Of a stretch of 64,000 nt of DNA, positions 9,366-56,465 are shown one piece after another. A model generated the notes under the pieces. That model had not been told where the DNA came from. It worked only from the letters and a program-made list of their open reading frames with translations, and searched no databases. Positions within the stretch are counted from its first letter, which is position 1. The number at the start of each line of letters is the position of its first letter. The translations under genes were made by a program, and so were the position numbers. The DNA is from Ranitomeya imitator. Lineage: Eukaryota. Where the stretch lies: positions 307,768,001 to 307,832,000 of the forward strand of contig NC_091284.1 of assembly GCF_032444005.1 (NCBI RefSeq). The letters run 5' to 3'.

Positions 9366-9512
9366 GGGGATGTGGTTCGTCTTTTTCATGCCGAGCAAGA
9401 GAAGTTTCTTACATGTGATGAATATAAGGCTCGGCATCATGTATTCCTGCGTACCACCCTGCGCCAGTCCGCCACTTCAGCTACCAGTTCCAACGCACTT
9501 TGGGAGGTGGAG
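9366..9512 (+). CDS. ITPR3: ITPR3 exon 8, 147 bp, containing the IP3-contacting RTTLR motif
   Basis: AG 9364-9365, GTGAGA 9513; [49 protein letters not shown]. Confidence 0.98.
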
Positions 9513-9784
9513 GTGAGAAGCTCTTTGCCATTTTTGTCTTGTTATAAAATGTGGGTTGTGTCCTTCTAACAATCCCCTTTTGATAATAGAGCTCCCTAAA
9601 ATAACATGATGACAGGCTGTCCAGCATCTGGGGGCCACAGCCATTACCTATAATAGACAGATTTTTTTTTAATGACATCAAGGCCTAATTAATGGGGTAC
9701 TTGTCGATGTACACAGCTACATATAGTTAACGATTAACTTTTTGATGTTTTCCATTCTATTTTGCTTCTTTTTTTTTATTAAAG

Positions 9785-9880
9785 GTGGTACATCATGATC
9801 CTTGCAGAGGGGGTGCTGGCCACTGGAACAGTTTATATAGATTTAAACACCTTGCAACTGGAAACTACCTTGCCGCAGAA
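9785..9880 (+). CDS. ITPR3: ITPR3 exon 9, 96 bp
   Basis: AG 9783-9784, GTAAGT 9881; [32 protein letters not shown]. Confidence 0.98.
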
Positions 9881-10962
9881 GTAAGTTTGGGGCATTATAT
9901 TGAAATATTTGATGGCTTATCTATGCAACTATATGGTGATTGTATTTTGATAGCTAATGCTGTAGTTAATGTTTAATTTGACCATAGGCATCATGGTGTG
10001 GGGCATAGAAAAGCTTTGTCATGCTCTACTTTTGCACAACCCATTCACTGCTGCTCATTTTCTGAGTAAATGTGGCAGTGCTCCTCATGCTATCTGTAGA
10101 TGATAGCTAATTATCCCATTGTGTATTTTATTCTAACATTGTTGACGTGATAAGAGCAGTGGTTTCTCCTACATTAATTTCCATAGCTATTGGGAAAGGT
10201 ACGTATAATGTGGTCAGTTCGGTTTTCTGCACAATAAGCTATGCGGAATAGTGTCCTTAATCTAAAGTACAGCACTTTGGCATTCAGACACCAGACTGAG
10301 AAGCGTTCTATTTTTACAATAGTCAGTTTGCATTTGCAAGAAGCCAGTTTTAGGTGGTAATCCAGGTATTTGGACTTGTCTCGCTTTGACTGTACTGAAA
10401 TTACTCAGCTCTGTAAAAGGGGCCATCATTAGCTGTAGATGTGAGTAGTGAGAGCCAATCTGTCTAGATAGGAGCCGTGACATCACTGTAATTTACACAC
10501 ATTTGACAAATACTTATAGAGATATGGAACACATTTCCAGCACAGAACCTCATATCTTAGGAAAAGGTGTGTCTCTGTTTATGGGGATTCAGTGCGATAA
10601 GGGGCATGAAAGAACATGTATGCCCGTGTTTAGTACAGCGTCTCGTAGGTGTGTTTTATGTGCAGTTTTCAGCTGCTTATCTCAGTTAGAACAATAAATA
10701 ATATATTAATAATGCAGTCCTCGGCTGTTACAGGTCTTCTGAAGAGTATGATGTAGGATACGCTTATTCCTCATGCTGTCCGTGTCCATAGCACAACCGT
10801 GCAGGAACCAATGTGCGCCAATGTGCAAGTGCACACTGTAATTTTCACCCTGACCACACCACGGTTCTGTGGGAAAAAAGCCGCAGCATGCTGTGGTCTG
10901 TTCCGATTTACTGACCAGGCTAGTGCATGTAAATAGCCGGCATCTGCTGCACCCGTCTGCTG

Positions 10963-15800: not shown

Positions 15801-17970
15801 CTGAAGAAAGCATTGGCCAGGTCGATCACCGTGAACACTTGCTGTGGAAGGCACATTTGAGAGCAAGGTGTGCGGAATCGGCACAATTGGGGTTTCAAAT
15901 ACTGTAGTGTCATTCACAGCTCTTAGGTCATGTACCATTCTGAACTTGGCTGGCTCTCCTTTTGCAGTCATTTTCTTGACAGGGAAGAGTGGGGTATTGC
16001 AAGGAGACATGCAGGGGATGACTACCCCTATTTCCAGGAACACCTTCAATTGGTCTGAGATGGCTTGACTCTGGGCGATGGACAAGGGCCAGTATGGGTC
16101 ATAAGGCCAGTATGGGCCTTACGAGGATATAGAGTGTTGTGAATTCTGTGGTCAAGCTCCCTCCTGTGGTCATGAGTGGTACTTCGGCTGGTTCTGTCTA
16201 TGAGCTTCCTCTGGTGGATGTAAGTGGGGCTGCGGCTTCTGAGTTCCCTTCCTCAGGTGACGAGGTTAAGTCGTTAGGTGCTGCTCTATTTAACTCCACC
16301 TAGTTCTTTGTTCCTGGCCTCCAGACAATGTTCCAGTATTGGTCTTGCTCTCTCTCCTGGATCGTTCTTGTGGCCTGTCTGCCCTGCATAAGCCTAGTTC
16401 TGCTTGTGTTACTTTTGTTTGCTATTTTTTCTGTCCAGCTTGCTATATTGGTTTGTCTTGCTTGCTGGAAGCTCTGGGACGCAGAGGGAGCACCTCCGTG
16501 CCGTTAGTCGGTGCGGAGGGTCTTTTTGCGCCCTCTGCGTGGTTGTTTGTAGGTTTTTGTGCTGGCCGCAAAGCTATCTTTCCTATCCTCGGTCTATTCA
16601 GTAAGTCGGGCCTCACTTTGCTAAAATCTATTTCATCTCTGTGTTTGTATTTTCATCTTTACTCACAGTCATTATATGTGGGGGGCTGCCTTTTCCTTTG
16701 GGGAATTTCTCTGAGGCAAGGTAGGCTTATTTTTCTATCTTCAGGGCTAGCTAGTTTCTCAGGCTGTGCCCGAGGCGCCTAGGTCTGGTCAGGAGCGCTC
16801 CACGGCTACCTCTAGTGTGGTGTGATAGGATTAGGGATTGCGGTCAGCAGAGTTCCCACGTCTCAGAGCTCGTCCTATGTTATTAGTAACTATCAGGTCA
16901 CTTTGTGTGCTCTTAACCACCAGGTCCATTGTGTTTCTGAATCACCAGTTCATAACAATAGAGTGCCTGGCTTTAGTGATACCCGCACTGGGGCAACTTG
17001 AAGTTTTCCCACGTCTTGGGGTCCCTTAGACCATAGACTTTCTGGTACTACGTCCAGTACCTCCTTTGGTAGGCCTCCATCGGTTGTTTGAGGTTCCTGT
17101 AGGGCCGCCAGCATGACTCACTCTTCCTTGGTCAGAGGTGAAGAAAGGGTCACGGTCCCATCTTCCTGGAACACTATGGTTGCCTTTAGTTTTTGTACTA
17201 GGTCTGCCCCCAGTAGGTTGAGTGGGCAGGTTCTTGACACCACAAACTGGGACAGGATAGAGTGTCCTGGCTGAGTGCACACGCTCAGTGGCTTTGTAAG
17301 CTGAGAATGTCTGACTTGACCATCAATGCCTACGCAAGACACAGAGGATTCTGATAGGCAGGTAGGGTCATGGAGTTCCACATGTCTCATCACACTTCTG
17401 GCTGCACCAGTGTCCACAAGAAAAGACCTGACAACGTCATCCACTTTCAGGGTAATTTGGGGAATTGGTCCTGCAGATGGGGTTTTGCATGTCAGGAGCG
17501 TGGTGCCTTGCGGACCTGGCTTGCCCCTGTCCTATGGGCGGGGTGTTTCACTGTTTACTTTGTCTGCTCCTTGGTCTGCTCCTCTGGGCAGGGTCTTGGG
17601 TTGTGGTGGAGCTCTGCACCGACTCTGGTAATGACCCAATTTGCCGCAGTTGAAACATCTGACATTTCTTCTGTCTCTGTATTGCGGTGGCTCTTCCGAG
17701 TCTATGGCCACCATGAGGGGGGCCGTCTTCCGCACTCCTGGCTGAGACTCAATCCCCTTGGCCACTGTGAGCAGGGTGTCCATTGCTATCGACCTGTACT
17801 CGGGTCTAGCCACTATCAATGCTTCCTGATTGGCTCTCTGAGTCCATGCACAAAGGCCTGTGCCAACATCTGCCTGTGTATCTGGTCATGAATGGTGAAG
17901 CCCAGGTCCTGGAGAACCTGCATTACTCTGCCATGAAACTTCTCCACAGACTGTCTTCTCCTGACTCATG
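12856..17970 (-). mobile_element. Class I (gamma/epsilon-like) endogenous retrovirus, 5'-truncated gag-pro-pol pseudogene, no env
   Basis: Gag CCHC knuckle CFNCGKLGHYQSRC; TAG then in-frame ITLKV...FLVDTGA protease; RT with MPQG and LLQYVDDLLL; RNase H FVDGS / SAQEAEL / IYTDSRY; integrase PYHPQSSGKVERLNGTLK and a GP(Y/F)-like C-terminus; multiple frameshifts. Confidence 0.92.
16135..16957. mobile_element. Solo LTR (823 bp) of an unrelated LTR retroelement inserted in the ERV pol
   Basis: TGTTGTG...CATAACA with ATAGAG immediately on both sides; ERV pol frame resumes across it. Confidence 0.9.
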
Positions 17971-23776: not shown

Positions 23777-26700
23777 AGGTAAGTTCACACAGGGCGTTTT
23801 TGCTGCTTTTTTTTAAGCAAATTTTCAGCTGCTTTTTACAGTACCAGCAAAGCCTATGAGATTTCAGAAATTTCGTGCACACACATTGGGTTTTTGTGTG
23901 ATCTTTTTTTTTTTTTTTTGCTTTGCAGCTTTTTTTTTACATAGGGCATGTCACTTCTTTCAGGGTTTTTTCAGCTTTTTTCACCCATTGACTTGAATGG
24001 ATGATGAAAAAACGCTGCAAATACGCAGGTTGACTTTTCTTGCAGCATATTTGTTGCAGAATAGTCAAGGACAGCCAGATGTGATGTCACACTCGGCTCT
24101 GCTACTAGATGACAGGCTGGATGATGCGTCCATGCAGCCTGTCATCCAGCAGCGGACCCCCCATTCACTTGAATTCGGGGTCCGACATTAGTGTTTGACA
24201 CGCTGTCATATGCATGACAGCGCCGCAAACACCGCTTCTGATCGGCGGGGAAATCCTCCCCGCTGGTCAGAGAGCCGCGGCTCCCACGCTGTCAGAAGAC
24301 AGCAGGAGCGATCAGCTGTGATCGGAGATGTAAACTCACCTCCGATCACTGATGTCAGCTGATAGGACTACGGCTCCCGTCATCTGACACCTACAGCCGC
24401 TAATTACAGTGACAACAGGAGCGGCGGATGGGAGTTTTCATCTTTCGCTCCTGCGCTATAAATAAATTACTTAATTAGGGGTTCCCCCTAATTTTGATAA
24501 CCAGCCAGACAAATCTCAACCCTCAGCTGTCAGCTTCAGCAAGGCTAGTTATGAAGAATATAGGGGTCCTCACGCTTTAAAAAAAATAAAAAAAATTTTT
24601 TTAATAAATTATTTTAAAAAACGGCGTGGGTTCCCCCCCATTTTTGACAATCATCCTTGCTAAAGCAAACAGCTGGGGGCTGGTATTCTCAGGCTGGTAA
24701 GGGGCCATTGATATAGGCCCCCTCAGCCTAAAAATAGCAGCCCGGAGCTGCCCATAAAAGGCCAATTCTGGTGCTTTGCCCGCCTCTTCCCACTTGCCCT
24801 GTAGCGATGGCAAGCGGGATAATGAGGGGTTAATGTCGCCTTCCTATTCTAAGGTGATATTAAGCTGGCTTAGTAATCGATAGGCGTCAATAAGACATCT
24901 ATCCGTTACTAATCCTATAGCAGTTAAAGGCTTAAATAAGCACACACACACATGCAGAAAAAAGTTTGTTTTTTGCTCCCCTCTTTCCCAGAGCCATAAC
25001 TTTTTTATTTTTCCATTACTATGGTCATGTGAGAGCTTATTTTTTGCAGGACGAGTTTTGCTTTTAAACGACACCATTGGTTTTACTATGGCTTGTACTA
25101 GAAAACGGGAAAAAATTCCAAGTGCGATGAAATTGAAAAAAAGTGCAATCCCACACTTGCTTTTTGTTTGACTTTTTTGCTACGTTCACTAAATGCTAAA
25201 ACTAACCTGATATTATGATTCTCTAGGTCATTATGAGTTCACTAGATTGTGGCCCGATTCTAACGCATCGGGTATTCTAGAATATGCATGTCCCCATAGT
25301 ATATGGACAATGATGATTCCAGAATTCGCGGCAGATTGTGCCCGTCGCTGATTGGTCGAGGCAACCTTTATGACATCATCGTCGCTGTGCCCGTTGCTGA
25401 TTGGTCGAGGCCTGGCGGCCTCGACCAATCAGAGACGCGGGATGTCTACGTCCTTTATGACATCATCGTCGCTGCGCCCGTCGCTGATTGGTCAAGGCCG
25501 CCAGGCCTCGACCAATCAGAGACGCGGGATTTCCAGGACAGACAGACAGACAGAAAGACAGACAGACGGAAAAACCCTTAGACAATTATATATATATAGA
25601 TAGACACCTAACATGTCTAGGTTATTTTTTATCTAAGTGGTGAAAAAAAATTCAAAACTTTGCTAAAAAAAAAAGTGTCATTTTCCGATACCCATAGCGT
25701 CAACATTTTTCATGATCTGGGGTCGGGTGAGGGCTTATATTTTGCGTGCCGAGCTGACGTTTTTAAAGATACCACTTTTGTGCAGATACGTTCTTTTGAT
25801 CGCCCGTTACTGCATTTTAATGCAATGTCGCGGCGACCAAAAAAACGTAATTCTGGCGTTTTGAATTTTTTTCTCGCTATGCTGCTTAGCGATCAGGTTA
25901 ATGCTTTTTTTATTGATATATTTAAATTTTTTTTCATATTTTTAAAAACTTTTTTTTAAACTTTTGTTATGCTTCAATAGCCTCCATGGGAGGCTAGAAG
26001 CTGGCACAACTGGATCGGCTCAGCTACATAGCAGCGATCATGAGATCGCTGCTATGTAGCTGAAATGCAGGCTTGCTGTGAGCGCCGACCACAGGGGGCA
26101 CACACAGCAGGCCGGCATCAGTAAGGACCTCTCAAGGACCTCTATGGTTACCATCCTGACGCATCGCCGACCCCTGATCATGTGACGGGGGTCGGCGATG
26201 CGCTCATTTCCGGACATGCGGCCGGAAGCGGTAGTTAAATGCCGCTGTCAGCGTTTTGACAGTGGCATTTAACAGGTTAATAGCGGCGGGTGAATCGCGA
26301 TTTCACCCGCCGCTATTGCGCGCACATGTCAGCTGTACAAAACAGCTGACATGACGCGACTTTGGTGTGGGCTCAGCGCCGGAGCCCACATCAAAGGGGG
26401 AGACACGACATGCGCTGTACTATTACGGCGCATGTCGTGAATGGGTAAAACATCACACAGTTTTGACAATCTTTTTATTGTTCTGTCATTCCAAAGCGAA
26501 GCTATCGATCTTCTGTAATAAAAATAAAATAAAAAAGCAAAAGCATACTCCCTGATCTGTCGTAGTCCGATATATCGAGTGTCCCATGCAGTATCTGGGG
26601 GAGATAAAGCTTACAACCAGGAGCGATGCTAATGCGATCGTTCCCGGCTCTAAGCTACTGGGAAATGAATGAGACGGAGCGGGCGCAGGCTCAGTAACTA

Positions 26701-32345: not shown

Positions 32346-33062
32346 TGATAAGAGTGTCAGGGTTATATAGAAACCTCCTGTGGCCGGTAATTGATAATGG
32401 GAGGATAAATTGTTATGAGTCCCCTCGGTGGGGTTAAGGTGGGTAGATTAGTTAGTGTAACTTTTAGAAGATATGGGGGACAAAAGTTGGAAAGTGGGGT
32501 ATAGTGTAGAAAGTATTGAATATTGCATATTGAACAACGCATTATTGGGTATAATAAGTATATTTATATTTTAGGAAAGGGGGAGATCGGGTGAGCTGGG
32601 TGGATTTAGTAGGTAGTGAGTCTGGTATAGGAAGTGAGGAGTACCAGATTAACCTCAATTATTATGGTTTCAAGAGACCGAAGAGCAGATAGTGCTTCAG
32701 GACCCAGGCAGATGGCAGTTAAGCCTAGCCCACACACTAACACATGGTTAGTTTGGGTAAATTGAAGGACTGCTATTTTGAATATTACTGTAAGAATTCA
32801 TATAAAATCCAGACTTGAGTATTTAATTAAATAGGCTAGAAGAGCAGCATTCTGATGGTTAATTCCGTGGAGGAGTGTTACATGGGCATTGTTCATGGCA
32901 GTCTTACAGATGTTAATAGGGCTTCCTTAGACAGGCCTAGCGCAAACCACTTAAAGGCCTTAGCCATTTAACCCATGGACTGGGATCTGGACTTACACAG
33001 GGGTCCCTGGTTTAGGGCCATGGAAAAGATTGCTGGCCAGTAAAGCAAGCTGAATGCAAGAA

Positions 33063-33344
33063 GGGGCAGCAAGGTGGCTCAGTGGTTAGCACTGCAGCCT
33101 TGCAGCACTGAAGTCCTGCCTTCCAATCCCACCAATGACAACATCTGCAAGGTGTTTGTATGTTCTCCCCGTGTTTGCGTGGGTTTCCTCCAGGCACTCC
33201 AGTTTCCTCGCACATTCCAGAAACATACCGATAGGGATTTTAGATTGTGAGTCCCATCGGGGACAGCGATGATAATGTGTGCAAACTGTAAAGCGCTGCG
33301 GAATATGTTAGCGCTATATAACAATAAGGTTATTCTTATTATTA
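33063..33344 (+). mobile_element. tRNA-derived V-SINE with an L2-like tail
   Basis: A-box-like GGTGGCTCAGTGG; V-domain GTATGTTCTCCCCGTGTTTGCGTGGGTTTCC; tail GTAAAGCGCTGCGGAATATGTTAGCGCTATATAA; (TTA)n end. Confidence 0.85.
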
Positions 33345-33345
33345 A

Positions 33346-33648
33346 GGCTTGGTTCACATTGCGTTTACAACAGCCCGTTCAACACATACGGTAACGGGCC
33401 GCTGTAAATGCAAGTGCCGGTATGGCAGCACGCTAGCGCAGATATAGCATCTGCTAGCTCTATCTGCGCTAGTGGTGACGGACCCGGAAACACTGCAGCC
33501 CGCGTCTCGGGGTCAGTCACTCAATGACTGCACATCGTTAGCGCACGCCCATTATGAGCGTGCGCTAGCGATGCATCTGACATTGCTTTCAATGGCGGTG
33601 TTGACGGACTACGTTACACCGCGTTTACAACGCAATGTGAGCCCAACC
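33346..33648. mobile_element. Harbinger-type MITE inserted at the SINE tail
   Basis: TIR GG(C/T)T(T/G)G(G)(T/C)TCACATTGCGTT; TSD TAA. Confidence 0.75.
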
Positions 33649-33699
33649 TAACATGCATGCATGCATGCATGCATGCTGATCATCCAATGAAGTCTTCCT

Positions 33700-34240
33700 C
33701 TTCGGATTCCGCTCAAGTTCTGCTTTTTTCCATCTCAAGAAAAATTTACCATCATGCAGTTTGCGTATTTATGCATTTTGGACATTTGTCGTTGCATAAG
33801 ATCATTATTGTTACATTATTTAGTGACAAGATTTGTTGTGTTCCATATATTCTTGTATTATGTTTAGTTAAAGTACATATGTGTTTCCTTTTTTTTTTTT
33901 TTTTCTATTTCTGCCTATTCCGTGAACTTTTTGTTTCATGTGGCCAATTGCTGGTTCACATTCACCACCAGGTGTTTTCATTCTCAGTGGATTACTTTTC
34001 CACCTGATCATTGCACCGGTGTGTTCAATGGATTCTTACATAAAAAGTACGGAACAGGCCAGACACTAGATATCATGATTAAGGGTGCTTTGCCACCTGA
34101 AACGCGTAGATAGATAGTGTTTTTATCCTTATTGTGCTGATGTTTTTATCCTCTGCTTCTATATGAAGTGAATAAAGTACCAAGTTTTTACTTTTCACTG
34201 TCTCGTTGAGCTGGATATTCTTTTTTTGCTTTTTGGAGCC
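33700..34240 (+). mobile_element. Penelope-like terminal repeat (sense to ITPR3)
   Basis: T-rich UTR-like sequence, hammerhead-like fold at 34063-34120, AATAAA at 34171; boundaries approximate. Confidence 0.6.
34063..34120 (+). ncRNA. Candidate minimal type I hammerhead ribozyme with an A3-U8 core variant
   Basis: Stem I ACACTA-GA-TATC / GATA-GA-TAGTGT; core ATGATTA; stem II GGGTG-CTTTGC-CACCT; GAAA; palindromic helix III ACGCGT; GUA cleavage triplet. Confidence 0.6.
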
Positions 34241-34248
34241 CAACCTAA

Positions 34249-37200
34249 CCCCTTAGTGACGGAGCCAAATTTTTAAAATCTGACCAGTGTTACTTTGTGG
34301 TAACTCTGGAACGCTTCAACATATCCCAATGATTTTGAGATTTTTTTTTCGTGACACATTATACTTTATGATAATGATAAATTTAGGTCAGTATGTTTTG
34401 TGTTTATTTATAAAAAATATCAGAAATCTGAGAAAAATGTTAAAAAATTAGCAATTTTCAAACTTTCACTGATTATCCCTTTAATCCAGATAGTCATACC
34501 ACACAAAAACATTAATACATAACATTTCGCAAATGTCTGCTTTACATCAGCACCATTTATAAAATGTTCTTTTATTTTGTTAGCATTTTAGGAGGTTTAG
34601 AAATGTAGCAGTAATTTTTCATTTTTTTCAAGGAAATTTACAAAAATTTATTTTTTTAGAGACCTATCCATGTTTGAAGTGCCTTTAGGGGTCCCATATA
34701 TTGGGAAACCCCCAAAAGTTATACTATTGTAAAAACAGCACCCCCTGACATATTGAAAACTGCTGTCAGGTAAATTATTAACCCTTCAGGTGATTTAAAG
34801 GAATTAATGCAAAGTGACATGACAGAAATGAAAATGTGTATTTTTACCACCTAAATGCCACTAACTTCTGAACAGTGTGAGGCTGTGGCCTCTGATACAG
34901 CTGTTTGTTCTCCCCAGAATGTGCATGCAGACGGATGAAGTCCATAGGTGTGCATGAGAGTCACGTATCTCCGGTTCGGGTTTTCCAGGTGGCTGAAGGC
35001 CACAGGTTTGTGTGTGTTTAAAAACCCTGCAGTAAGGGGTTTGGGTGTGTCGGGTGTCTGGCCAGGTCAGGCCAGGTGTGCGAGGTGCACGTCAGTGTCA
35101 GTCTGGTGTGTGCTGGTCTGCAGAGTGCATGGAGGCCAGCAGAGCCAGCACCCAGAGCACCCAGAGCAGCTGAATAGCCTGGCACCCGCAGTGTACACAG
35201 AGATGCAAGTCGTCCATGGCACTGGTCACGGATGTGGACAGTCCTGTGCCCGGAGGAGTCGGATGTGGACAGTCCTGTGCCCGGAGGTGGATGTCCTGTG
35301 CCCGTAGGAGTCAGATGTGGACAGTCCTGTGCCCGGAGGTGGATGTCCTGTACCCGAAAGAGGACTAGCATGTGCAACGATTGCAAACAGGTGGATATGG
35401 TGCACGGCTGCTATCCGGAAGATATCCTGAACTGTGTACGACTGTGTAAGTAAAGAGTCTGTAAAGAGACTGTGATACAGCGATGCAGGACACCCACAAG
35501 AACTAGTCAGAGGAGGACTGGCGTGTGTAGTGTCTGCAACATATGAGGCTGTGTGTATGGAGATGTATGGAGACTGTGAGATGGCGTGCGGTCGCCCAGG
35601 GAAACTGGACAAGGGACGTCTGGCCCGTTTAGGGACCGCAAATCTAAAGCCACGTGATATGTATTGCTTTGAACTGGTGTAAACTGGTCACTGATTATAT
35701 CCACTGAAGTTATATGCATCTATATGAATTGGACTTTAATGCTGTGAAGAAACACATTAAAAGAGACTTTTGTGTTTGAATTTGTGGGTCACTGCCTCTT
35801 CACTGCGTACGATGCTACAGCAGCTTTACAACAGGTTACAACAGCCGTCAGACTCTAAGGCCGCCATTTGGTCATGAACTGCCATGGCAAACATCAGGAC
35901 CACACAATCATAATCTGAGGGCACCAATTGGGATAAATAGGAAGCCCCCACACTCTGTTGACAGCAGCATCTAAGGGGTTAAACAGAGTTGGATGGTGCA
36001 AACACTGATCGTGGCTGACGCAACAAGTTGTCAGCTACTGTTGTGGTCAAAAGTACTGACACCTCTGCAATTCTCAGATAATACTCAGTTTCTTCCTGAA
36101 AATGATTGCAAACACAAATTCTTTGTTATTAGTATTTTCATTCAATTTGTCTTAAATGAAAAAACACAAAAAGAATTGTCCTGAAGCCAAATTGGATATA
36201 ATTCCACACCAAACATAAAAAGGGGGTGGACAAAAGTATTGGCACTGTTAGAAAAAATCATGTGATGCTTCTCTAATTTGTGTAATTAACAGCACCTGTA
36301 ACTTACCTGTGGCACCTAACAGGTGTTGGCAATAAATAAATCACACTTGCAGCCAGTTGACATGGATTAAAGTTTACTCAACCTCATTGAGCATGGAGAA
36401 AAGAAAGAAGACCAAAGAACTGTCTGAGGACTTGAGAAACCAAATTGTGAGGAAGCATGAGCAATCTTAAGGCTACAAGTCCATCTCCAAAGACCTGAAT
36501 GTTCCTGTGTCTACCGTGCGCAGTGTCATCAAGAAGTTTAAAGCCCATGGCACTGTGGCTAACCTCCCTAGATGTGGACGGAAAAGAAAAATTGACAAGA
36601 GATTTCAACGCACGATTGTGCGGATGTTTGATAAAGAACCTTGACTAACAACCAAACAAGTTTAAGCTGCCCTGCAGTCCAAGGGTACAACAGTGTCAAC
36701 CCGTACTATCCATCGACGTCTGAATGAAAAGGGGCTGTATGGTAGGAGACCCAGGAAGACCCCACTTCTTACCCCAAGACATAAAAAAACCAGGCTGGAG
36801 TTTCCCAAAACTTACCTGAAAAAGTTTTGGAAGAATGTTCTCTGGTCAGATGAGACAAAAGTTGCTTTGCTGCCTCTGGCACTGGACTGCTTGACCGTGT
36901 GCATGGCATTATGAAGTCTGAAGACTACCAACAAATTTTGCAGCATAATGTAGGGCCCAGTGTGAGAAAGCTGGGTCTCCCTCAGAGGTCATGGGTATTC
37001 CAGCAGGACAATGACCCAAAACACACTTCAAAAAGCACTAGAAAATGGTTTGAGAGAAAGCACTGGAGACTTCTAAGGTGGCCAGCAATGAGTCCAGACC
37101 TGAATCCCATAGAACACCTGTGGAGAGATCTAAAAATAGCAGTTTCGAGAAGGCACCCTTTAAATACCAGGGATCTGGAGCAGTTTGCCAAAGAAGAATG

Positions 37201-37550
37201 GTCTAAAATTCCAGCAGAGCATTGTAAGAAACTCATTAATGGTTACCGGAAGCGGTTGGTCAGTTATTTTGGCTAAAGGTTGTGCAACCAAGTATTTGGC
37301 TGAGGGTGCCAATACTTTTGTCTGGCCCATTTTTGGAGTTTTGTGTGAAATGATCAATGTTTTGCTTTTTGCTTCATTCTCTTTTGTGTTTTTTCATTGA
37401 AGACAAATTAAATGAAGATAATAACAAAGAATTTGTGATTGCAATCATTTTCAGGAAGAAACTGAGTATTATCTGACAGAATTGCAGGGGTGTTAATACT
37501 TTTGGCCACAACTGTATAGTGGACAGCTGTTGGATTGTCACCTGTATGGG
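34249..37550. mobile_element. Large degenerate piggyBac-type (CCCCTT-terminal) non-autonomous element hosting a Tc1; right end not found
   Basis: Starts CCCCTTAGTGAC; internal ~26-bp tandem GATGTGGACAGTCCTGTGCCCGGAGG repeats at ~35229-35355. Confidence 0.45.
36038..37514 (+). mobile_element. Tc1-like transposon with long TIRs and a decayed transposase
   Basis: TA flanks; TIR C(A/T)GTTGTGG(C/T)CAAAAGTA; KTKELSEDLR...WSDETK, QQDNDPKH, SPDLNPIEHLW; stops and an internal deletion. Confidence 0.92.
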
Positions 37551-38205: not shown

Positions 38206-38946
38206 GTAAGTATTGTTTCCCTAAAATAAAGAAAACACCCAAGCAAAATGCAACTTCACCTTGAAAAGTGCAGTATAAGCCAAAATATTTTTCAGTTCTT
38301 ACCAAAGAAAAATGTAATTCGCAATCTGTGGCACAAAGAAGAAACTTCCGTGTAGAATAATGAGGGATGTAGACACTCGGAGAGTGTTATGTAATGCATT
38401 GCCCTCTTACTTGCACAGGAACAAAACCTACATTCCTGAAATGACATATCTAGTCCATCTCCCCAGTGAGAAGAAGTTAATTTAGATCTCTCAAGCTAAT
38501 ACCCAATGCAGCCATTTCATTTTTCTGTTTGCTTCGTGCTAATTTTATCAAGGTCCTCCTTACAACGGCGCTGCTGTATTAAAAACAAATAGGACTGCAA
38601 AGCATCCCTGGAGAATGGTTCTCTGCTTTGCCTTAGAAACGTGACCTCTTGGGCTGCATTTTATTTATGCTTTCTTTTTTTCCTCCTGCCATATTCTACA
38701 TGGTCTTCTTAACACCTGTATTTCATATCCTTCTGTAGTTCTAACGTTTCTTATTTATTTTAGTAAATCTGTGCAACTCCAGGCTTTCTGCTTTCTCTTC
38801 CTGGCTTTTCCTGAATTATTTAACCTCTCCATAAATTCAACTCCTCACAGTACTTTTATTTCTTTTCTTTCTCTTGGTTTTTTCCTTCTTCATCTCTCAA
38901 TTTTCAGCCTCTGCCATCTCTCCATTGACCCCCGATCTTCTCTCAG

Positions 38947-39089
38947 GTAGTGAACAGTCGTCCCAATCGCAGGAACGCTGGAGAGAAGATTAAGTATCGC
39001 CTTGTTGCTGTACCGCACGGCAATGACATTGCCTCATTGTTTGAACTGGATCCAACTACTCTACAGAAGACAGATTCATCTGTGCCCAG
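38947..39089 (+). CDS. ITPR3: ITPR3 exon 11, 143 bp, phase 0/2
   Basis: AG 38945-38946, GT 39090; [47 protein letters not shown](R). Confidence 0.97.
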
Positions 39090-40216
39090 GTACCTTCAAT
39101 ATGTCATAAAATGATTGCGTATACAGACACATTGCTCCTGCTCTGCTCCTAGGTGTAGTGTTGCCTCCTAGGGCTTGTTGTAATGGCTTATTTGCCTTGC
39201 TGTGTGTAAATTCTGTTTTATTAGCCTTCAGTACATCTGTTAGCCTATTGTTTCAATTCCCTCACAGTAAAATAGAACTTCCTAGCATTACTCCTGAGCA
39301 TTCCTCTTTGAAGCTACAGGTCATGTCCTCTTTTTCCAGTCTCTTTCATGCATGATAATAAGAACATCCTGAACCTTGGGGAAACTTTTGATGTACTTTT
39401 CTGTCTTTTTTTACATCAGACTGTAAAAGCTATCAGCTAGGCTCTCTATTGCGTTGGACGTACAGACCCAAAGTTCTGGCTTTACACCCCTATAGTTAAG
39501 TAATAGACTGTCAGATGCCAATAGATCTTGTCAGTCTCTAGTCTCCATTCTATTTTCGATGCCTGTTTAGCAGCAATAAGTGAGGACATCTTATCATATA
39601 AGTCGTGAAACTGGAGTTATTTCTTCCAGAGACCCCTGGCATTCTCTTACTATTAGCATTTCAAGAATTCACTACGAGAATAACGCTGCCACAGCATTTG
39701 TGACATAAAACACAATTTTTTATTCTAAATAGTTAAAACTGAATAGTTTTTCCTTCTCTCATGTAAAAAATCGAATTGGTTATCCTCTTTCTGACAGCTG
39801 GAAGCCATCGAGGAACCTATCAGGCAACACGTTTGCTAGTCTAGGTTCATTGCTCTGATGTGATGCTGAAATTAAGTATTCAGTTCAGATTCCTTTGATT
39901 TACTATGCAATATCCTCATAAAATTACTTACAGTTACTGGAAAAGCAGAAAAGTGAAATTTCTGTTTTGTGCATCTTATCTAATGGAATCTTGTAGTTCC
40001 ATATTTCTGTCAGTCTGGAGGCCTGACTTTGGTTGTGTAATATCCTGTAACTTTGCCTTCTTTCTTGCCAAAATGCAATTTGTGAGTGTCTGCCTATGAT
40101 CCTATTGATGTTTTCCTCAGTAGCATCCCCAAACATTTGGTGAGAACTGTATGCACCTCTGATGGGACGTAGTTATTCAGTCTGCTGACTAACGTTCATT
40201 GCTTGGCTTTCATCAG

Positions 40217-40316
40217 AAACTCGTTTGTGAGGCTACGACATTTGTGCACCAACACATGGATTCAGAGCACCAATGTCCCCATTGATGTTGATGAAGAACG
40301 GCCAATACGTCTGATG
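40217..40316 (+). CDS. ITPR3: ITPR3 exon 12, 100 bp, phase 2/0
   Basis: AG 40215-40216, GTAAAA 40317; (R)[33 protein letters not shown]. Confidence 0.97.
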
Positions 40317-42271
40317 GTAAAATCACAATCTCTTTTCTTAGATATCTTTTCTGAAGGTCTTTTAATGAGTGGTAGTTGGTTTTTAACATCTTCAGGATGC
40401 AGGTAATTTTTGTTATTGCATTATCATTTTTTTGCTCCCTTCTTCGCAGAGCCTTTTTTTTTTTTAAATTTTTCAATTGACGTAGGTGTTTCAGGATTTT
40501 TTTTAGCGGGACCAGTTGTAGTTTTGCATAACACCATTAACTTTAGCTTTCGCTGTATTAGAAAACATGAAAAAATTTCTAGTGTGATGAAATGGTGAAA
40601 AAAATGCAATTTTACAATGATTGAGTTTTGTATTTACAACATATTTTTGTTGGTAAAAATCACTTTTCAAAATGATTTTCCAGATAAGTACGATTATGAC
40701 AACATCAAATTTACATACATGTTTTTTATATGGTTTCTGTTTCCACTTTTTTTTACAGCATGAACTGACAGTTTTATTGATACCAATTTAGGATATACAG
40801 TATATCACATTTTGATCACGTTCTGTTGCATATTTTAGGCCAGTGTGGTGACCAAAATACAGCAATTCTGGCATTTTTATTTTTTTCTCAGTATGGCGCA
40901 TTTCATTTGGGTTAACGAATTTGATATTTCCATAGGCCAGACTTTTACAGATGCAGCAATACTGAATATGTTTGTTTTTTATTTTTTAATGGGTAAAATG
41001 GGGGAGAGAGGTGGAAGATTCAAACTTTTATATATTATTTAATTTTAAAACCCTTTTTTGATTTTTTGGGTTTATTTTTTAGGTTCTTTTTAGACTTCAA
41101 CCTGCGATCGACCAATCATTTCTATTTTATACTGCATTACCAAAGTATTGCAGTATATATAGCAAAAAGTGCAGGCTCATATAAATAAAGCTCTTTCTGT
41201 CCTTGAGCCTAATATGACTAGCCAAGATGCCAACAACAGGGCTCTTAAGCATGCCCCCGGCTACTGTGGCAACCCGTGATTGCCCTGCCCTCTATTGGCG
41301 GTGGCGGGGTGAGGGCAATGTGAGCCAGTGCACACAAGCACTGGCAACTGTCCCATTTAAACACTGGTTTAGAAAGAAGCATTCGGGAAAAATATACACA
41401 ATAGAGTGACCCTATTTAAGAAGAAGAGAAAAAGAGTAAAAAGGTATGTATCACACAGGAGATTGTATGGTGCCCCGGTTTGAAATTTCACCTGCTGCTG
41501 CATCATGGTTGGGTGGAGCCCCCAGTAAAAATTCTCCGTATAGGGAATAAAAGAACTAAGATAGGCTGCATGGATGGAAAAGAGTCTCTTACTACAAGTT
41601 CAATGAGGGTTCTTACAATGCGCTTCAATGCTGTGCCGGCATCGTTTTCAAGTCATAAAAATTGACAGACAGTGTTTACAGGTACAGAGGCGTATTTAAG
41701 GCCTAAAATGGGTGCTATATATTTGTGGACCACCCATTTAAGGGTGGGTAAGAAATTAAAAAGAAATAAACTAGAAATGAAAAACATGTCTATAAGTAGG
41801 TGGAAAACAAAAAGTTTTGATTAAACCAATTGAAGAGGTGGTTAGTAACAACATGCAAGAAGAGGAGTTAAAAAAAAAAGAAAAAGTGTAAAAGTAGTGT
41901 ACAGAGTGTGAGGGAAACGAACTATTAAAGGGTACAGTAAAAAAAAAAAAAAAGGGTAAAATAAGTTGTCAGACCACAGAGTGTTTAGAAGGCAATATTT
42001 CAGAGTAGTATTGTGAAAATAAAACAGTAAAACCTATAAAATTAAATTTAACACATATTGACATTGGAATAAAAACAAATAAGAGAAAAATAATTGCAGC
42101 TAGCATAAAATAAGGGAGCAATGTAATAAATGTTGGTAAGAAAATAAATGATACTGATAAAATAATGTAATAGAATGTGAAATATGTTTAAAAAATGCAT
42201 TCTTTTTTTTAAGTTTATGGCCACCAAAATTTGTAAGACAGTGAATTGCAAAAAATATATATTTATATAGA

Positions 42272-43173: not shown

Positions 43174-44801
43174 CAGTACAGACCAAAAGTTTGGACACAC
43201 CTTCTCATTTAACGATTTTTCTGTATTTTCATGACTATGAAAATTGTAAATTCACACTGAAGGCATCAAAACTATGAATTAACACATGTGGAATTATATA
43301 CTTAACAAAAAAGTGTGAAACAACTGAAATTATGTCTCATATTCTAGGTTCTGTGAAGTAGCCACCTTTTGCGTTGACTGCTTTGCACACTCTTGGCATT
43401 CTCTTGATGAGCTTCAAGAGGTAGTAACCGGAAATGGTTTTCACTTCACAGGTGTGCCCTGTCAGGTTTAATAAGTGGGATTTCTTGCCTTATAAATGGG
43501 GTTGGGACCATCAGTTGTGTTGTTCAGAAGTCTGGTGGATACACAGCTGATAGTCCTACTGAATAGACTGTTAGAATTTGTATTATGGCAAGAAAAAAGC
43601 AGCTAAATAAAGAAAAACGAGTGGCCATCATTACTTTAAGAAATGAAAGTCAGTCAGTCCAAAAAATTGGGAAAACTTTGAAAGTGTTCCCAAGTGCAGT
43701 TGCAAAAACCATCAAGTGCTACAAAGAAACTGGCTCACATGAGGACGGCCCCAGGAAAGGAAGACCAAGAGTCACCTCTGCTTCTGAGGATAAGTTTATC
43801 CGAGTCACCAGCCTAAGAAATCGCAGGTCAACAGCAGCTCAGATTAGAGACCAGGTCAATGCCACACAGAGTTCTAGCAGCAGACACATCTCTACAACAA
43901 CTGTTAAGAGGAGACTTTGTGCAGCAGGCCTTCATGGTAAAATAGCTGCTAGGAAACCACTGCTAAGGACAGGCAACAAGCAGAAGAGACTTGTTTGGGC
44001 TAAAGAACACAAGGAATGGGCATTAGACCAGTGGAAATCTGTGCTTTGGTCTGATCAGTATAAATTTGAGATCTTTCGTTCCAACCACCGTGTCTTTGTG
44101 CGACGAAGAAAAGGTGAACAGATGGACTCCACATGCCTGTTCCCACCGTGAAGCATGGCGGAGAAGGTGTGATTGTGTGGGGGTGCTTTGCTGGTGACAC
44201 TGTTGGGGATTTATTCATAATTGAAGGCATACTGAACCAGCATGACTACCACAGCATCTTGCAGCGGCATGCTATTCCATCCGGTTTGCATTTAGTTGGA
44301 CCATCATTTATTTTTCAACAGGACAATGACCCCAAACACACCTCCAGGCTGTGTAAGGGCTATTTGACCAAGAAGGAGAGTGATTTGGGTGCTACGCCAG
44401 ATGACCTGGCCTCCACAGTCACCAGACCTGAACCCAATCGAGATGGTTTGGGGTAAGCTGGACTGCAGAGTGAAGGCAAAAAGTGCCAACAAGGGCTAAG
44501 CATATCTGGGAACTCCTTCAGGATTGTTGGAAGACCATTTCCGGTGACTACCTCTTGAAGCTCATCAAGAGAATGCCAAGAGTGTGCAAAGCAGTCATCA
44601 AACCAAAAGGTGGCTACTTTGAAGAACCTAGAGTATAAGACATATTTTCAGTTGTTTCACACTTTTTTGTTAAGTATGTATTTCCACATGTGTTAATTCA
44701 TAGTTTTGATGCCTTCAGTGTGAATGTACAATTTTCATAGTCATGAAAATACGGAAAAATATTTAAATGAGAAGGTGTGTCCAAACTTTTACTCTCTACT
44801 G
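43174..44801 (+). mobile_element. Tc1-like transposon, ~190-bp TIRs, frameshifted transposase
   Basis: TIR CAGTACAGACCAAAAGTTTGGACACACC; ORFs 43585-44151 and 44133-44456 with GRPR, WSDQ (E changed to Q), QQDNDPKH, PDLNPIE. Confidence 0.92.
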
Positions 44802-46412: not shown

Positions 46413-49400
46413 GCTCTTCTCTACCCTGCTGCAGTTCATGTGTATACATAGAGAGAGACCGGACTAGTCTGATGTGGTCAATGGCTAGCTCTTCTCTGCC
46501 CTACTCCAGTTCATGTATGTACATAGGGAGAGACCTGGCTAGTCTGATGCGGTCACCGGCCAGTTCTTCTCTGTCCTGCTCCTGTCCATGTATGTACATA
46601 GGGAGACCTGACTAGTCTGATGTGGTCAACGGCCAGCTCTTCTCTGCCCTACTCCAGTTCATGTATGTACATAGGGAGAGACCTGGCTAGTCTGATGCGG
46701 TCACCGGCCAGTTCTTCTGTCCTGCTCCAGTCCATGTATGTACATAGGGAGAGACCTGGCTAGTCTGATGCGGTCACAGGCCAGTTCTTCTCTGTCCTGC
46801 TCCAGTCCATGTATGTACATAGGGAGAAACCTGACTGTACATAGGGAGAGACCTGGCTAGTCTGATGCGGTCACCGGCCAGTTCTTCTCTGTCCTGCTCC
46901 AGTCCATGTATGTCCATAGGGAGAGACCTGACTAGTCTGATGCGGTCACCGGCCAGTTCTTCTCTGCCCTGCTCCAGTCCATGTATGTACATAGGGAGAG
47001 ACCTGGCTAGTCTAATGCGGTTACCGGCCAGTTCTTCTCTGCCCTGCTCCAGTCCATGTATGTACATAGGGAGAGACCTGGCTAGTCTGATGCGGTCACC
47101 GGCCAGTTCTTCTCTGCCCTGCTCCAGTCCATGTATGTACATAGGGAGAGACCTGGCTAGTCTGATGCGGTCACCGGCCAGTTCTTCTCTGCCCTGCTCC
47201 AGTCCATGTATGTACATAGGGAGAGACCTGGCTAGTCTGATGCGGTCACCGGCCAGTTCTTCTCTGTCCTGCTCCAGTCCATGTATGTACATAGGGAGAG
47301 ACCTGGCTAGTCTGATGTGGTCACCGGCCAGTTCTTCTCTGCCCTGCTCCAGTCCATGTATGTACATAGGGAGAGACCTGGCTAGTCTAATGCGGTCACC
47401 GGCCAGTTCTTCTGTCCTGCTCCTGTCCATGTACTGTATGTACATAGGGAGAGACCTGACTGTACATAGGGAGAGACCTGGCTAGTCTGATGCGGTCACT
47501 GGCCGGTTCTTCTCTGTCCTGCTCCAGTCCATGTATGTACATAGGGAGAGACCTGACTAGTCTGATGCGGTCACCGGCCAGTTCTTCTCTGCCCTGCTCC
47601 AGTTCATGTATGTACATAGGGAGAGACCTGGCTAGTCTAATGCGGTTACCGGCCAGTTCTTCTCTGCCCTGCTCCAGTCCATTTATGTACATAGGGAGAG
47701 ACCTGCTAATCCACTGGATCAGGGAGAGGGTAATCCGGCCTGAGACGGCATCAGACTAATCAGGTCTCTCTCTATGGTGTCCGCCCGGCTTTTCAAACTG
47801 TTTTCTTTGAAACAAGTTCTGTACTTCAGAGTGAAACCTACATGGCTGCATTTGCTCAGCCAGGCTCTGATTTATAGTGCCCGTGGTTCTGGGCAGCATG
47901 AGCCTAATGACAAGTTGCCTTTAAGAGTCACATGGTGACTGCTTTTCACATTTTATTCAAGACGTGTTGCTTTTGCTTTCTTTTTATCAGAGAGCTTTGA
48001 TGCTTATTAGATTAGACATGATGTTTTTTAAATGGTATTCTAAAGATTGTAATATATGTCCAGTGATATATGGTCCACATATGATATATGGTCCATGTCA
48101 TCAATACATGTCTGGTTTTATTATTATTTTTGCACATGGGTTGAAAATCTGAGTTTTGCCGCAGATATTGTGTGCCCCACACAGGGTAATACTCCTTCTG
48201 TATTGTAGACTACTAAGTCTGAACACTTACTGCTTTCATTAGAGTGCTGTCTGTAAGGCTGGGGTAATTCAAGCGTCTAAAAAAAATTGGAGCCCGGGTC
48301 CAGAAGGACAAGTGCTACCTGCTGTAATGTGCGCTCCCCGCTCGCAGTTCTGCGCCTGCTTCTAATCTCGTGGTGGTGTCTCAGTCTGGCAGAGCTCACC
48401 ATGTCGTACTTACCTGAGAAATGTGCAATTATTTGTTCCTGTATCAAACATGAGTTAGCAGCCTGTCTACAGCCATCTTGTCGCATGCATGCATTCATAG
48501 CTAGACACTTACACATACTGTACATACTCATCAGCCCCCACTGAGAACACACAGGAGGGCTGAGACATTGCAAAAAGAGCACCTAATAAATGGCGGCAAA
48601 GACATACAGGTTTTCTATATCCTTGTATACACTCTTACTTTTTGACATAGTGTTAAAATCAGCATTTCTGTTCTGAACACTTTGTATTGTGCAGTTGTGG
48701 CTAAATGTGGAAATAAGTAATTAAGCATCTTGGCGTAAAAACAGTTAATTGGCTGAACACTAAAAACAAGTCCTATATTGGTGCCTATTCCAACCACTCC
48801 CTATGTGTTTAGGCCTATTAATAGGATGTGTAGGTTAAATAGCACCTTTATCATGGGCTGCTTCTAATAGCCATTCAATGTATTGTTAAACACATCCTTA
48901 TCTGCACCGTGCACATTTATGATGTAACAATGAGCATCCGCTCACTACACAAACACAGATAACAGCCTGAACCCAAGCAACCCTCAGATAGAAGACTGTT
49001 CTGCGCCATCTCATTAAATCGCTGTGGATAGGTCATCATTACACAACCACTTATTGTGCATATATAGTCAGCATACTTTTACATCATCCTGTTCATTACT
49101 GATGCTCACATTAGCCAGATCCATAGCACGGAGGCATTGTGCAGTGTTGGGCTGAATTAGGATGTTCTTTCCCTGGGGTTGTGTTTCTAGTCTAGTCCTG
49201 TTGAGTGCACAGGAGCTCTCCATGTCTGCTGTGAAATTGTGTCTGTTGATCCTTCTATGAATGGTAAAAATTCTTCACAGTCCACACCCCAATGACTTCA
49301 TTCCTGCTGTCTGAGACATGCAGGGTCTTAATAAGGTGCATGCAGAACAAGGATTAACAAGACTCTAAGCAGTATGATGCTACAGTAACGCTTGGTGTTG

Positions 49401-55808: not shown

Positions 55809-56465
55809 CAGGGTGGATAAAAATCAATGTTTTTTTAAAAAAAATAAATAAAAAAAATCGGATTTTTTTTATTTAAATCGGATTTTTTTGATTTAAATCG
55901 GATTTTTTTCAATAAACTGTTTTGAGGAAAATATTTTACCATCCAAAGGTTCTTCCATCATGAGATAAAGCTGAGTTGTTTAACTCAGTAGAATAAAGGC
56001 TGTATATGTGTAACATTCACAATGCCATGCTCTTCCAGAGGTTTCTGTAGGATTAGTGGGCAGTTTCTCTCCTATATTATCACAGACGCTCGCTTTACTT
56101 ACGCAGTTCTCAAAACTGAATTTGACTCCGCAGAGGTCCCAGCCTCTTCTTCACGGCAAAAATGTTACAATATGAACAGAGTTGAGAAAAAGACCTTAAT
56201 CCTATTGTTCTACAAACCTATGAATACAGAATCAACCCCTTCAGTGCCAAGTCCAAGAAGTTAGACAATGTTTCTGATTGTTTGGAGTGGAATAGATCTG
56301 CACAACACAAGAAGAATGTGAATCTAAGTGTGAGGAGGAAGAAGGGCAAGCAGACAAGAAAATGAAAGTGAAACTTTGAGCACAATACTGCAGCATAGCC
56401 ACAGACAGACAAGTCTGGATCTGTTTGTGTGTACGATCTGAGGTTTATTACATTCTTTCCTTATA

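What the first reader, a model, noticed from the sequence alone, without database searches (positions are those of the whole stretch)
34063..34120. Sense-strand hammerhead ribozyme candidate with a compensatory A3-U8 core inside ITPR3 intron 9
Seen in sequence: ACACTA GA TATC | ATGATTA | A GGGTG CTTTGC CACCT | GAAA CGCG TA | GATA GA TAGTGT. This folds as a type I hammerhead: stem I of 4+6 bp around a GA/GA loop, stem II of 5 bp with a G-U closing pair, and a self-complementary ACGCGT helix III ending in a GUA triplet. The core differs from CUGAnGA at exactly positions 3 and 8 (C to A, G to U), preserving the tertiary Watson-Crick 3-8 pair. Established: Penelope-like elements carry minimal, dimer-dependent hammerheads in their terminal repeats, and the 3-8 pair tolerates compensatory swaps; U3-A8 is the usual natural variant. 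Inference: A3-U8 is an unusual natural solution and the covariation argues for past selection on cleavage. Because it is sense to ITPR3 and followed by AATAAA (34171), it could cut or terminate the pre-mRNA.
Basis: partly seen in the sequence, partly recalled or inferred. Interest (0 to 1): 0.8.

Follow-up and report, generated by a model that had tools for sequence, protein, structure and literature searches.

The report
Lone hammerhead-like motif in receptor intron
A 58-base stretch in an intron of an IP3-receptor gene does fold like the small dimer-dependent hammerhead ribozymes of Penelope-like retroelements, but two catalytic-core letters differ, it has no partner copy, and it is most likely an inert relic or a look-alike, not a ribozyme that cuts the gene's RNA.

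Summary
It has helix I (6 bp, a GA/GA loop, 4 bp), core AUGAUUA, a bulged A, a 5-bp helix II, GAA, the palindrome ACGCGU, A17, and AATAAA at 34171. It lies sense in a ~29-kb intron of an IP3-receptor gene.

A minimal-hammerhead descriptor finds only this site in the window. About 0.003-0.02 such sites are expected per window by chance. The layout matches published PLE and amphibian type I hammerheads.

Against membership and function:
- No Rfam hammerhead model scores it, even on 84 nt.
- C3 and G8 are A and U.
- The 10.1-11.1 pair is G-U, not G-C.
- The best fold pairs A3-U4-G5 with helix III, leaving about 0.4% of the ensemble hammerhead-compatible.
- The window holds no second motif and no second ACGCGT for dimer formation.
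- Complete double-mutant data show that only the G3:C8 swap rescues activity (PMC9901934).

One sequence cannot show covariation, and no paralogue could be retrieved.

Most likely this is an inert relic of a truncated PLE or retrozyme copy, possibly a 583-bp insertion with a 14-bp target duplication. A chance hairpin remains a serious rival. Interest is low.

The parts
34063..34074 (+). Helix I, 5' strand: 6 bp outer stem, GA of the GA/GA internal loop, 4 bp inner stem
34075..34081 (+). Core strand AUGAUUA, hammerhead positions 3-9. A replaces C3 and U replaces G8. A3-U4-G5 also reads as an AUG that opens a 12-codon ORF.
34082..34082 (+). Unpaired A between position 9 and 10.1, a feature typical of PLE minimal hammerheads
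   Evidence: PMC4209133
34083..34098 (+). Helix II, 5 bp, with a 6-nt loop. The 10.1-11.1 pair is G-U instead of the conserved G-C.
34099..34101 (+). G12 A13 A14 of the core
34102..34107 (+). ACGCGU: the A15.1-U16.1 pair capped by the palindromic tetraloop CGCG. This helix III can form only between two copies. It is the only ACGCGT in the window.
   Evidence: PMC7229834
34108..34108 (+). A17. The predicted scissile bond is 3' of this base.
   Evidence: Inference from hammerhead numbering; not tested
34109..34120 (+). Helix I, 3' strand. It lies within a short (GATA)n-like run.
33653..34235 (.). Putative 583-bp insertion that carries the motif. It also holds (CATG)n at its left end and a T18 run at 33887-33905. 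It has no paralogue in the window. Its orientation and family are unknown.
33639..33652 (+). Left copy of the exact 14-mer GAGCCCAACCTAAC, the putative target-site duplication. It overlaps the right end of the MITE.
34236..34249 (+). Right copy of the same 14-mer
33347..33648 (.). Neighbouring PIF/Harbinger-like MITE with 21-nt inverted ends and TAA on both sides. It is older than the putative insertion.
34171..34176 (+). AATAAA hexamer, one of 64 on this strand of the window
9746..9973 (+). Open frame holding the upstream IP3-receptor exon (MIR domain, profile positions 48-87)
38929..39111 (+). Open frame holding the downstream IP3-receptor exon (MIR domain, profile positions 94-136)

Best explanation
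The motif is a solitary, catalytically inert hammerhead-like element. It is most likely the ribozyme remnant of a 5'-truncated Penelope-like or retrozyme-type retroelement copy that landed, sense-oriented, in a ~29-kb TE-rich intron of an IP3-receptor gene.

Shown:
- The sequence has the full scaffold of the dimer-dependent type I hammerhead, with 11 of 13 core letters.
- It lies in the intron on the sense strand.
- It is single-copy in the window.
- Its most stable fold is a plain imperfect hairpin in which A3-U4-G5 pair with helix III.

Inferred:
- It descends from a retroelement hammerhead.
- It sits in a 583-bp insertion (33653-34235) flanked by a 14-bp target duplication.
- It does not cleave at a meaningful rate, because it has no partner for helix III, carries A3/U8 and a G-U at 10.1-11.1, and is trapped in a competing fold.
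- It has no effect on the host transcript.

Whether A3/U8 was inherited from its source element or arose in this copy is unknown.
For: - Architecture: a 4-bp inner helix I with an internal loop and a closing stem, an unpaired base after A9, G at 10.1, and helix III of one A-U pair with a palindromic tetraloop. These features are listed for PLE minimal hammerheads (PMC4209133) and amphibian type I hammerheads (PMC7229834). The axolotl constructs end in the same way, GAAAC-palindrome-GU-H.
- Unlikely by chance in one window: it is the sole descriptor hit, against a null of 0.0025-0.02.
- Such motifs are common in non-mammalian vertebrates: about 9,000 minimal hammerheads in Xenopus tropicalis, and 44% of Xenopus retrozyme-related copies overlap introns.
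- An exact 14-mer direct repeat brackets 583 bp around the motif. Isolated repeats of 13 nt or more at 100-1500 nt spacing are rare in the window.
- The predicted cut site lies 127 nt from the right end of that insertion. In Anolis Poseidon copies the distance is 85-92 nt, or about 125 nt with the optional tail (PMC11167929).
- Inertness: single minimal hammerheads show no detectable cleavage, and amphibian monomers give 6-22% per hour even with canonical cores.
- Only the G3:C8 swap rescues 3-8 changes in a full double-mutant map.
- The hammerhead fold is -14.9 kcal/mol against an MFE of -17.9, so about 0.4% of the ensemble is hammerhead-compatible.
- The window has no second motif or second ACGCGT.
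Against: - No Rfam hammerhead model reports the site, even at E up to 10 on 84 nt.
- No paralogue exists in the window, and none could be fetched from any collection. Descent from a retroelement family is therefore unproven.
- No RT/GIY-YIG ORF is nearby. The reverse transcriptases in the window are LTR-type.
- The 3' end of the putative insertion is T-rich, not the AC-rich stem-loop described for Poseidon. The target is not AT-rich.
- The 10.1-11.1 pair is G-U, and helix II has 5 bp, not 6-8.
- If the copy decayed neutrally from a canonical core, two specific transversions with no stem mismatch are about as improbable as a pure chance match (my estimate).
- An 11-mer shared with the left end of the neighbouring MITE allows a different reading of the flanks.
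Confidence: 0.5

Rival explanations
1. Chance look-alike. This is an ordinary imperfect hairpin in unique or unclassified intronic sequence. Its 3' arm is a short GATA-type run, and it happens to carry UGA..A and GAAA around an apical stem-loop. It has no evolutionary link to ribozymes.
For: - The minimum-energy fold is a simple hairpin that uses A3-U4-G5 as stem.
- There is no Rfam hit, no paralogue and no PLE ORF.
- Two core letters and the 10.1-11.1 pair deviate from the consensus.
- The descriptor was defined after the fact.
- At about 0.0006-0.0025 per 64-kb window, a genome of several gigabases holds tens of such sites, and a scan of many windows will surface some.
Against: - Within this window the expectation is far below one, and the candidate is the only scaffold of 674 with all eight fixed core letters; none has one mismatch.
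- Features that were not demanded, or were only optional, in the descriptor also fit the published family traits. These are the bulged base after A9, G at 10.1, the outer closing stem, and the GUA triplet also seen in the axolotl.
Confidence: 0.35
2. The motif is the central hairpin of a second PIF/Harbinger-type MITE (about 33949-34245) related to the neighbouring one. The hammerhead resemblance is incidental.
For: An 11-mer at 33952 matches the left end of the neighbouring MITE. The 14-mer at 34236 matches its right end plus TAA. The spacing is nearly the same, 602 against 597 nt.
Against: - Identity stops abruptly after 11 and 14 nt, with no graded similarity, and the outermost left bases do not match.
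- The segment has no MITE-like overall fold: z = 0.0 against -7.5 for the neighbour.
- No inverted ends were found.
- An 11-mer match within 1.4 kb is not rare by chance (my estimate is about 0.2).
Confidence: 0.08
3. One reading: an active A3-U8 hammerhead that self-cleaves the IP3-receptor pre-mRNA, alone or as a dimer, and with the AATAAA downstream truncates or terminates the transcript.
For: - The orientation is sense.
- The scaffold is intact and the 3-8 pair is Watson-Crick.
- U3-A8 variants exist and cleave.
- AATAAA lies 63 nt downstream.
Against: - The window holds no partner motif for helix III.
- Monomers of this class are inactive or slow even with canonical cores.
- Double mutants at 3 and 8 other than G:C have low activity.
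- The competing fold dominates.
- The 10.1-11.1 pair is G-U.
- AATAAA occurs about once per kb here.
- In Anolis Poseidon no RNA-seq ends were seen at the hammerhead site even for a canonical motif.
Confidence: 0.03

Closest known systems
Minimal hammerhead ribozymes of Penelope-like elements (Cervera & de la Pena 2014, PMC4209133)
   Same: [quoted passage not shown] A 3-8 covariant (U3-A8) is known in Schistosoma.
   Different: A3-U8 replaces C3-G8 or U3-A8. The 10.1-11.1 pair is G-U, not G-C. Helix II has 5 bp, not 6-8. No PLE ORF, flanking repeat or second copy is nearby. No family of paralogues has been shown.
Amphibian type I hammerheads of non-LTR retrozymes and newt satellite 2 (PMC7229834; Li, Clavereau & Pollet 2026 bioRxiv)
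   Same: Helix III is a single base pair capped by a palindromic tetraloop. The 3' core ends GAAAC-palindrome-GU-H, with GUA in axolotl Rtz353. Activity depends on dimers. Host repeats have low GC and units of about 300 bp. Monomer derivatives are scattered through genomes, including introns.
   Different: Those have canonical CUGANGA cores, a 6-bp helix I and a 4-bp helix II with conserved loop-loop contacts, and occur in tandem arrays. Here there is one copy, no tandem repeat and a variant core.
Rfam Hammerhead_1 / Hammerhead_3 / HH9 / HH10 / type II models
   Same: General three-helix junction and most core letters.
   Different: None of the models reports the site at gathering score, or at E up to 10 on 84 nt.
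Box C/D snoRNA (weak Rfam resemblance only)
   Same: AUGAUUA resembles a C box and CUGA a D box. The site is intronic.
   Different: E-values are 1.8-5.2, about 50 bits below the gathering scores. The boxes are only about 15 nt apart, and there is no terminal stem next to the boxes. It is not a member.

Membership tests
Hammerhead ribozyme (any type) | Three helices around a junction, in the order I - core - II - GAA - III - H17 - I | tested here: met
   Helix III exists only as one A-U pair with a palindromic loop, as in the dimer-dependent natural forms.
Hammerhead ribozyme (any type) | Conserved core C3 U4 G5 A6 N7 G8 A9, G12 A13 A14, A15.1-U16.1, H17 | tested here: not met
   Eleven of 13 letters are present. 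C3 is A and G8 is U. The pair stays Watson-Crick. The only natural 3-8 variant found in the literature I could read is U3-A8.
Hammerhead ribozyme (any type) | Recognised by a curated covariance model (Rfam 15) | tested here: not met
   No hammerhead family is reported at gathering score or at E up to 10 on 601 nt and 84 nt.
Hammerhead ribozyme (any type) | Site-specific self-cleavage 3' of position 17 | not testable with these tools
   This needs in vitro transcription or RNA-end mapping. Indirect evidence is against it.
PLE minimal hammerhead | Unpaired nucleotide between 9 and 10.1; palindromic 15.2-16.2 and loop 3; helix I of 4-5 bp with loop 1 | tested here: met
   compared with PMC4209133.
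PLE minimal hammerhead | Conserved G10.1-C11.1 pair and a long helix II (6-8 bp) | tested here: not met
   The pair is G-U and helix II has 5 bp.
PLE minimal hammerhead | Lies in the terminal repeat of a Penelope-like element, or in a truncated copy of one | tested here: inconclusive
   No RT/GIY-YIG ORF is nearby. A 14-bp direct repeat around 583 bp, and the 127-nt distance to its right end, fit a truncated copy. There is no homology evidence.
PLE minimal hammerhead | Belongs to a multi-copy consensus family with compensatory changes in the helices | not testable with these tools
   There is no paralogue in the window.
PLE minimal hammerhead / amphibian retrozyme | A second motif close by (tandem or within reach) to build the dimeric helix III | tested here: not met
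   It is the only descriptor hit, even when relaxed. It holds the only ACGCGT in 64 kb. There is no tandem duplication.
Box C/D snoRNA | C and D boxes brought together by a terminal stem, with guide-length spacing, scoring at the Rfam gathering threshold | tested here: not met
   Scores are 9.7-12.5 bits against thresholds of 60-75.

The most novel reading that the evidence does not exclude
The copy is a faithful, young member of a retroelement hammerhead family whose consensus core is A3-U8. That would be a natural covariant of the C3-G8 tertiary pair not reported in the literature I could read, and it might still cleave as a dimer in its parent element. Two points are compatible with this. 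The putative insertion post-dates a MITE that still has undecayed CpGs, and its 14-bp duplications are identical. The A3/U8 change also moves the AUG of a CUG-AUG-A core one codon upstream in the same frame. This would matter only if the parent's ORF starts in the core. In the one PLE I could read about (Anolis Poseidon) the ORF starts after G8.
Probability: 0.17. Interest if true: 0.5.

Novelty: new member of a known kind. Interest (0 to 1): 0.25.

Why it matters
If the A3-U8 core turned out to be the consensus of a real family, it would add a second natural covariant of the hammerhead's 3-8 tertiary pair. G8 supplies the general-acid 2'-OH, so the variant would be a useful natural test of how much the base identity at position 8 matters, and it would show that descriptor searches fixed on CUGANGA undercount retroelement hammerheads. 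As it stands, the site is one more solitary hammerhead-like relic in a TE-rich intron of a non-mammalian vertebrate. That situation is already described as common, and nothing indicates an effect on the IP3-receptor transcript.

Tried and rejected
- Rfam at gathering score on the whole window, and at E up to 10 on 601 nt and 84 nt. No hammerhead or other ribozyme appeared, only insignificant snoRNA-like matches.
- Paralogues in the window by blastn (word size 9) and nhmmer --max: none.
- An internal tandem duplication that could supply a partner: not significant.
- Translated ORFs across the motif, used as probes against the 5.8-billion and 1.84-billion protein sets: nothing.
- A control with an ORF from the neighbouring SINE gave one weak EukProt hit. 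These sets therefore do not hold this genome's spurious ORFs, and the negatives say nothing about copy number.
- Exact look-up of the intact Tc1 transposase, to locate the genome: not on record.
- DNA patterns from the motif and flanks in viral contigs and metagenome contigs (both scans used): nothing.
- The Lunse 2017 and Przybilski & Hammann 2007 papers are not held. My recollection that all four Watson-Crick 3-8 pairs keep some context-dependent activity is unverified.
- I did not build a covariance model from the four published retrozyme hammerheads, because that would have meant typing long sequences.
- pre-miRNA reading: rejected because of the 5/6-nt internal loop and the absence of any Rfam miRNA match.
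- Second-MITE reading: kept only as a minor rival.

Full report
**Observation.** In hammerhead numbering the parts are:
- helix I 5' strand, 34063-34074: 6 bp, the GA of a GA/GA internal loop, then 4 bp;
- core AUGAUUA, 34075-34081, positions 3-9;
- an unpaired A at 34082;
- helix II GGGUG/CACCU with a 6-nt loop, 34083-34098;
- G12 A13 A14, 34099-34101;
- the palindrome ACGCGU, 34102-34107, giving the A15.1-U16.1 pair and a CGCG tetraloop;
- A17 at 34108;
- helix I 3' strand, 34109-34120.

AATAAA is at 34171. RNAfold reproduces helices I and II at -17.9 kcal/mol, z = -3.3. The hairpin survives in a 206-nt context.

**Gene context.** Pfam places IP3-receptor exons on the + strand. Ins145_P3_rec is at 1562-1750. 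MIR is at 9366-9566, 9746-9973 (profile positions 48-87), 38929-39111 (profile positions 94-136) and 40173-40403. The motif therefore lies, in sense orientation, in an intron of about 29 kb. I could not verify that the gene is ITPR3 or that this is intron 9. The intron and the rest of the window are full of transposons: Tc1/mariner, hAT and LTR-type pol genes, a SINE, and a Harbinger-like MITE. The repeats look anuran to me, but that is from memory only.

**Is it more than chance?** I wrote a minimal-hammerhead descriptor with positions 3 and 8 left free. The candidate is the only hit on either strand of the window, even when the descriptor is relaxed to 3-bp stems and a non-palindromic helix III.
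- Markov sequences give 0.01 hits per window, and 0.0025 with a Watson-Crick 3-8 pair.
- I also used the real sequence as its own control. It contains 674-1114 structural scaffolds of this shape. Only the candidate carries the eight fixed core letters; none is one mismatch away and three are two away. An arbitrary 8-letter core is met 0.017 times on average.
- An outer closing stem like the one here is seen in 17% of scaffolds.

The motif is thus unexpected in one window, roughly 1 in 400 to 1 in 2000. The descriptor was written after the fact, and a genome of several gigabases would still contain tens of chance instances.

**What it resembles.** Cervera and de la Pena (PMC4209133) list the traits of metazoan PLE minimal hammerheads:
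- a long helix II;
- an unpaired base between 9 and 10.1;
- a conserved G10.1-C11.1 pair;
- palindromic 15.2-16.2 and loop 3.

They report thousands of mostly solitary copies in fish, coelacanth, Xenopus and reptiles. [quoted passage not shown] The published axolotl constructs end GAAAC-palindrome-GU-C/A. The candidate has the bulged base, the palindromic helix III, the short helix I with a closing stem, and the GUA triplet. It departs in four places: A3, U8, a G-U at 10.1-11.1, and a helix II of only 5 bp. No Rfam hammerhead model reports it, even when only 84 nt are searched at E up to 10. It looks like this family, but membership is not established.

**The 'compensatory' core.** C3 and G8 pair, and U3-A8 is the covariant seen in nature. 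The inference of past selection does not follow, because covariation is a property of an alignment and here there is one sequence. I could not obtain relatives.
- There are no paralogues in the window.
- ORF probes, DNA patterns and an exact-protein look-up found no relatives in the public collections.
- A control with a SINE ORF gave only one weak EukProt hit. The protein sets do not cover this genome's non-coding ORFs, so those negatives are uninformative.

Experimental data argue against activity. [quoted passage not shown] A3 also has a cost of its own. In the minimum-energy fold, A3-U4-G5 pair with C-G-U16.1 of helix III. The hammerhead secondary structure is 3 kcal/mol less stable, -14.9 against -17.9, and only about 0.4% of the ensemble is compatible with it.

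**Can it act on the pre-mRNA?** Motifs with this helix III need a second copy. Single minimal hammerheads showed no detectable cleavage and dimers only weak cleavage. Axolotl monomers with canonical cores reached 6-22% in an hour. In Anolis Poseidon no RNA-seq ends map to the hammerhead site. The window holds no second motif and no second ACGCGT, and there is no tandem duplication. AATAAA occurs 64 times on this strand, about once per kb, so its presence 63 nt downstream means little. I put the functional reading at about 3%.

**Surroundings.** Just upstream lies a Harbinger-like MITE at 33347-33648. It has 21-nt inverted ends, TAA on both sides, fold z = -7.5 and CpG observed/expected of 1.15. 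The exact 14-mer GAGCCCAACCTAAC, made of the MITE's last 10 nt, the TAA and one flanking base, recurs at 34236-34249. Isolated direct repeats of this length are rare in the window. The simplest reading is a 14-bp target-site duplication around a 583-bp insertion (33653-34235) that arrived after the MITE and carries the motif.

The predicted cut site is then 127 nt from the insertion's right end. In Poseidon of Anolis, genomic copies end 85-92 nt past the cut site, or about 125 nt with the optional 30-40-nt tail. This is suggestive only. The insertion's 3' end is T-rich, not AC-rich, the target is not AT-rich, and there is no homology evidence.

A minor alternative is a second MITE, because an 11-mer at 33952 matches the neighbour's left end with similar spacing. 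Against it, identity stops abruptly and the segment has no MITE-like fold (z = 0.0).

**Weighing.** Neutral decay of a canonical copy into exactly A3/U8, with all 21 base pairs intact, is about as improbable as a chance match (my estimate). The realistic choices are three:
- a copy of a source element that already had A3-U8;
- a decayed relic;
- a look-alike.

I give about 0.5 to descent from a retroelement hammerhead, inert here. Within that, about 0.17 overall goes to a true A3-U8 family. I give about 0.35 to chance, 0.08 to a MITE-borne hairpin and 0.03 to an active ribozyme acting on the gene.

**Verdict.** This is an ordinary kind of object for a TE-rich intron of a non-mammalian vertebrate. 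The one point of possible interest, a natural A3-U8 core, cannot be decided with these tools and needs a genome-wide family consensus.

Noticed in passing
window 33347-33648: PIF/Harbinger-like MITE: 21-nt terminal inverted repeats (86% complementary), TAA on both sides, a very stable fold (DNA z = -7.5) and undecayed CpGs (observed/expected 1.15 against 0.49 for the window). It is inserted in the A/T-rich tail of a tRNA-type SINE at about 33060-33330.
   Followed up: partly
window 33639-33652 and 34236-34249: Exact 14-nt direct repeat GAGCCCAACCTAAC bracketing 583 bp. It looks like the target-site duplication of an insertion that post-dates the MITE. The insertion starts with (CATG)n and holds a T18 run at 33887-33905. 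Its family and orientation are unknown.
   Followed up: partly
window 34075-34113: The A at hammerhead position 3 creates an AUG that opens a 12-codon ORF (MIKGALPPETRR, then stop). It is in the same frame as the A6-U7-G8 AUG of a canonical CUGAUGA core. In some PLEs the ORF starts inside the hammerhead (PMC11167929).
   Followed up: no
window 51335-52357 (+) and 53624-54667 (-): Two Tc1/mariner (Sleeping Beauty-like) transposase reading frames of 340 and 348 aa without stops, with HTH_SB, HTH_Tnp_Tc3_2 and DDE_3 domains. They may be recently active copies. Fragments lie at 36854-37273 and 43567-44148.
   Followed up: partly
window 13384-15913 (-) and 62247-63998 (-): LTR-retrotransposon pol remnants (RVT_1, RNase H, integrase). 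The second runs off the window end as an open 584-aa frame.
   Followed up: partly
window 56400-58840 (+): hAT-type transposase remnants (DUF659 and the hAT C-terminal dimerisation domain).
   Followed up: partly
window ~2900-4000 and ~46700-47700: Two blocks of tandem satellite-like repeats, with many 14-mers recurring at regular spacings (multiples of about 28 and about 75 nt).
   Followed up: no
window 25340-25356 and 25476-25492: Isolated exact 17-nt direct repeat 136 nt apart, possibly another target-site duplication around a very short insertion.
   Followed up: no
window 34068-34142 (+): Weak box C/D-like look (AUGAUUA as a C box, CUGA as a D box). Rfam E-values are 1.8-5.2, far below the gathering scores, so I judged it insignificant.
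   Followed up: yes
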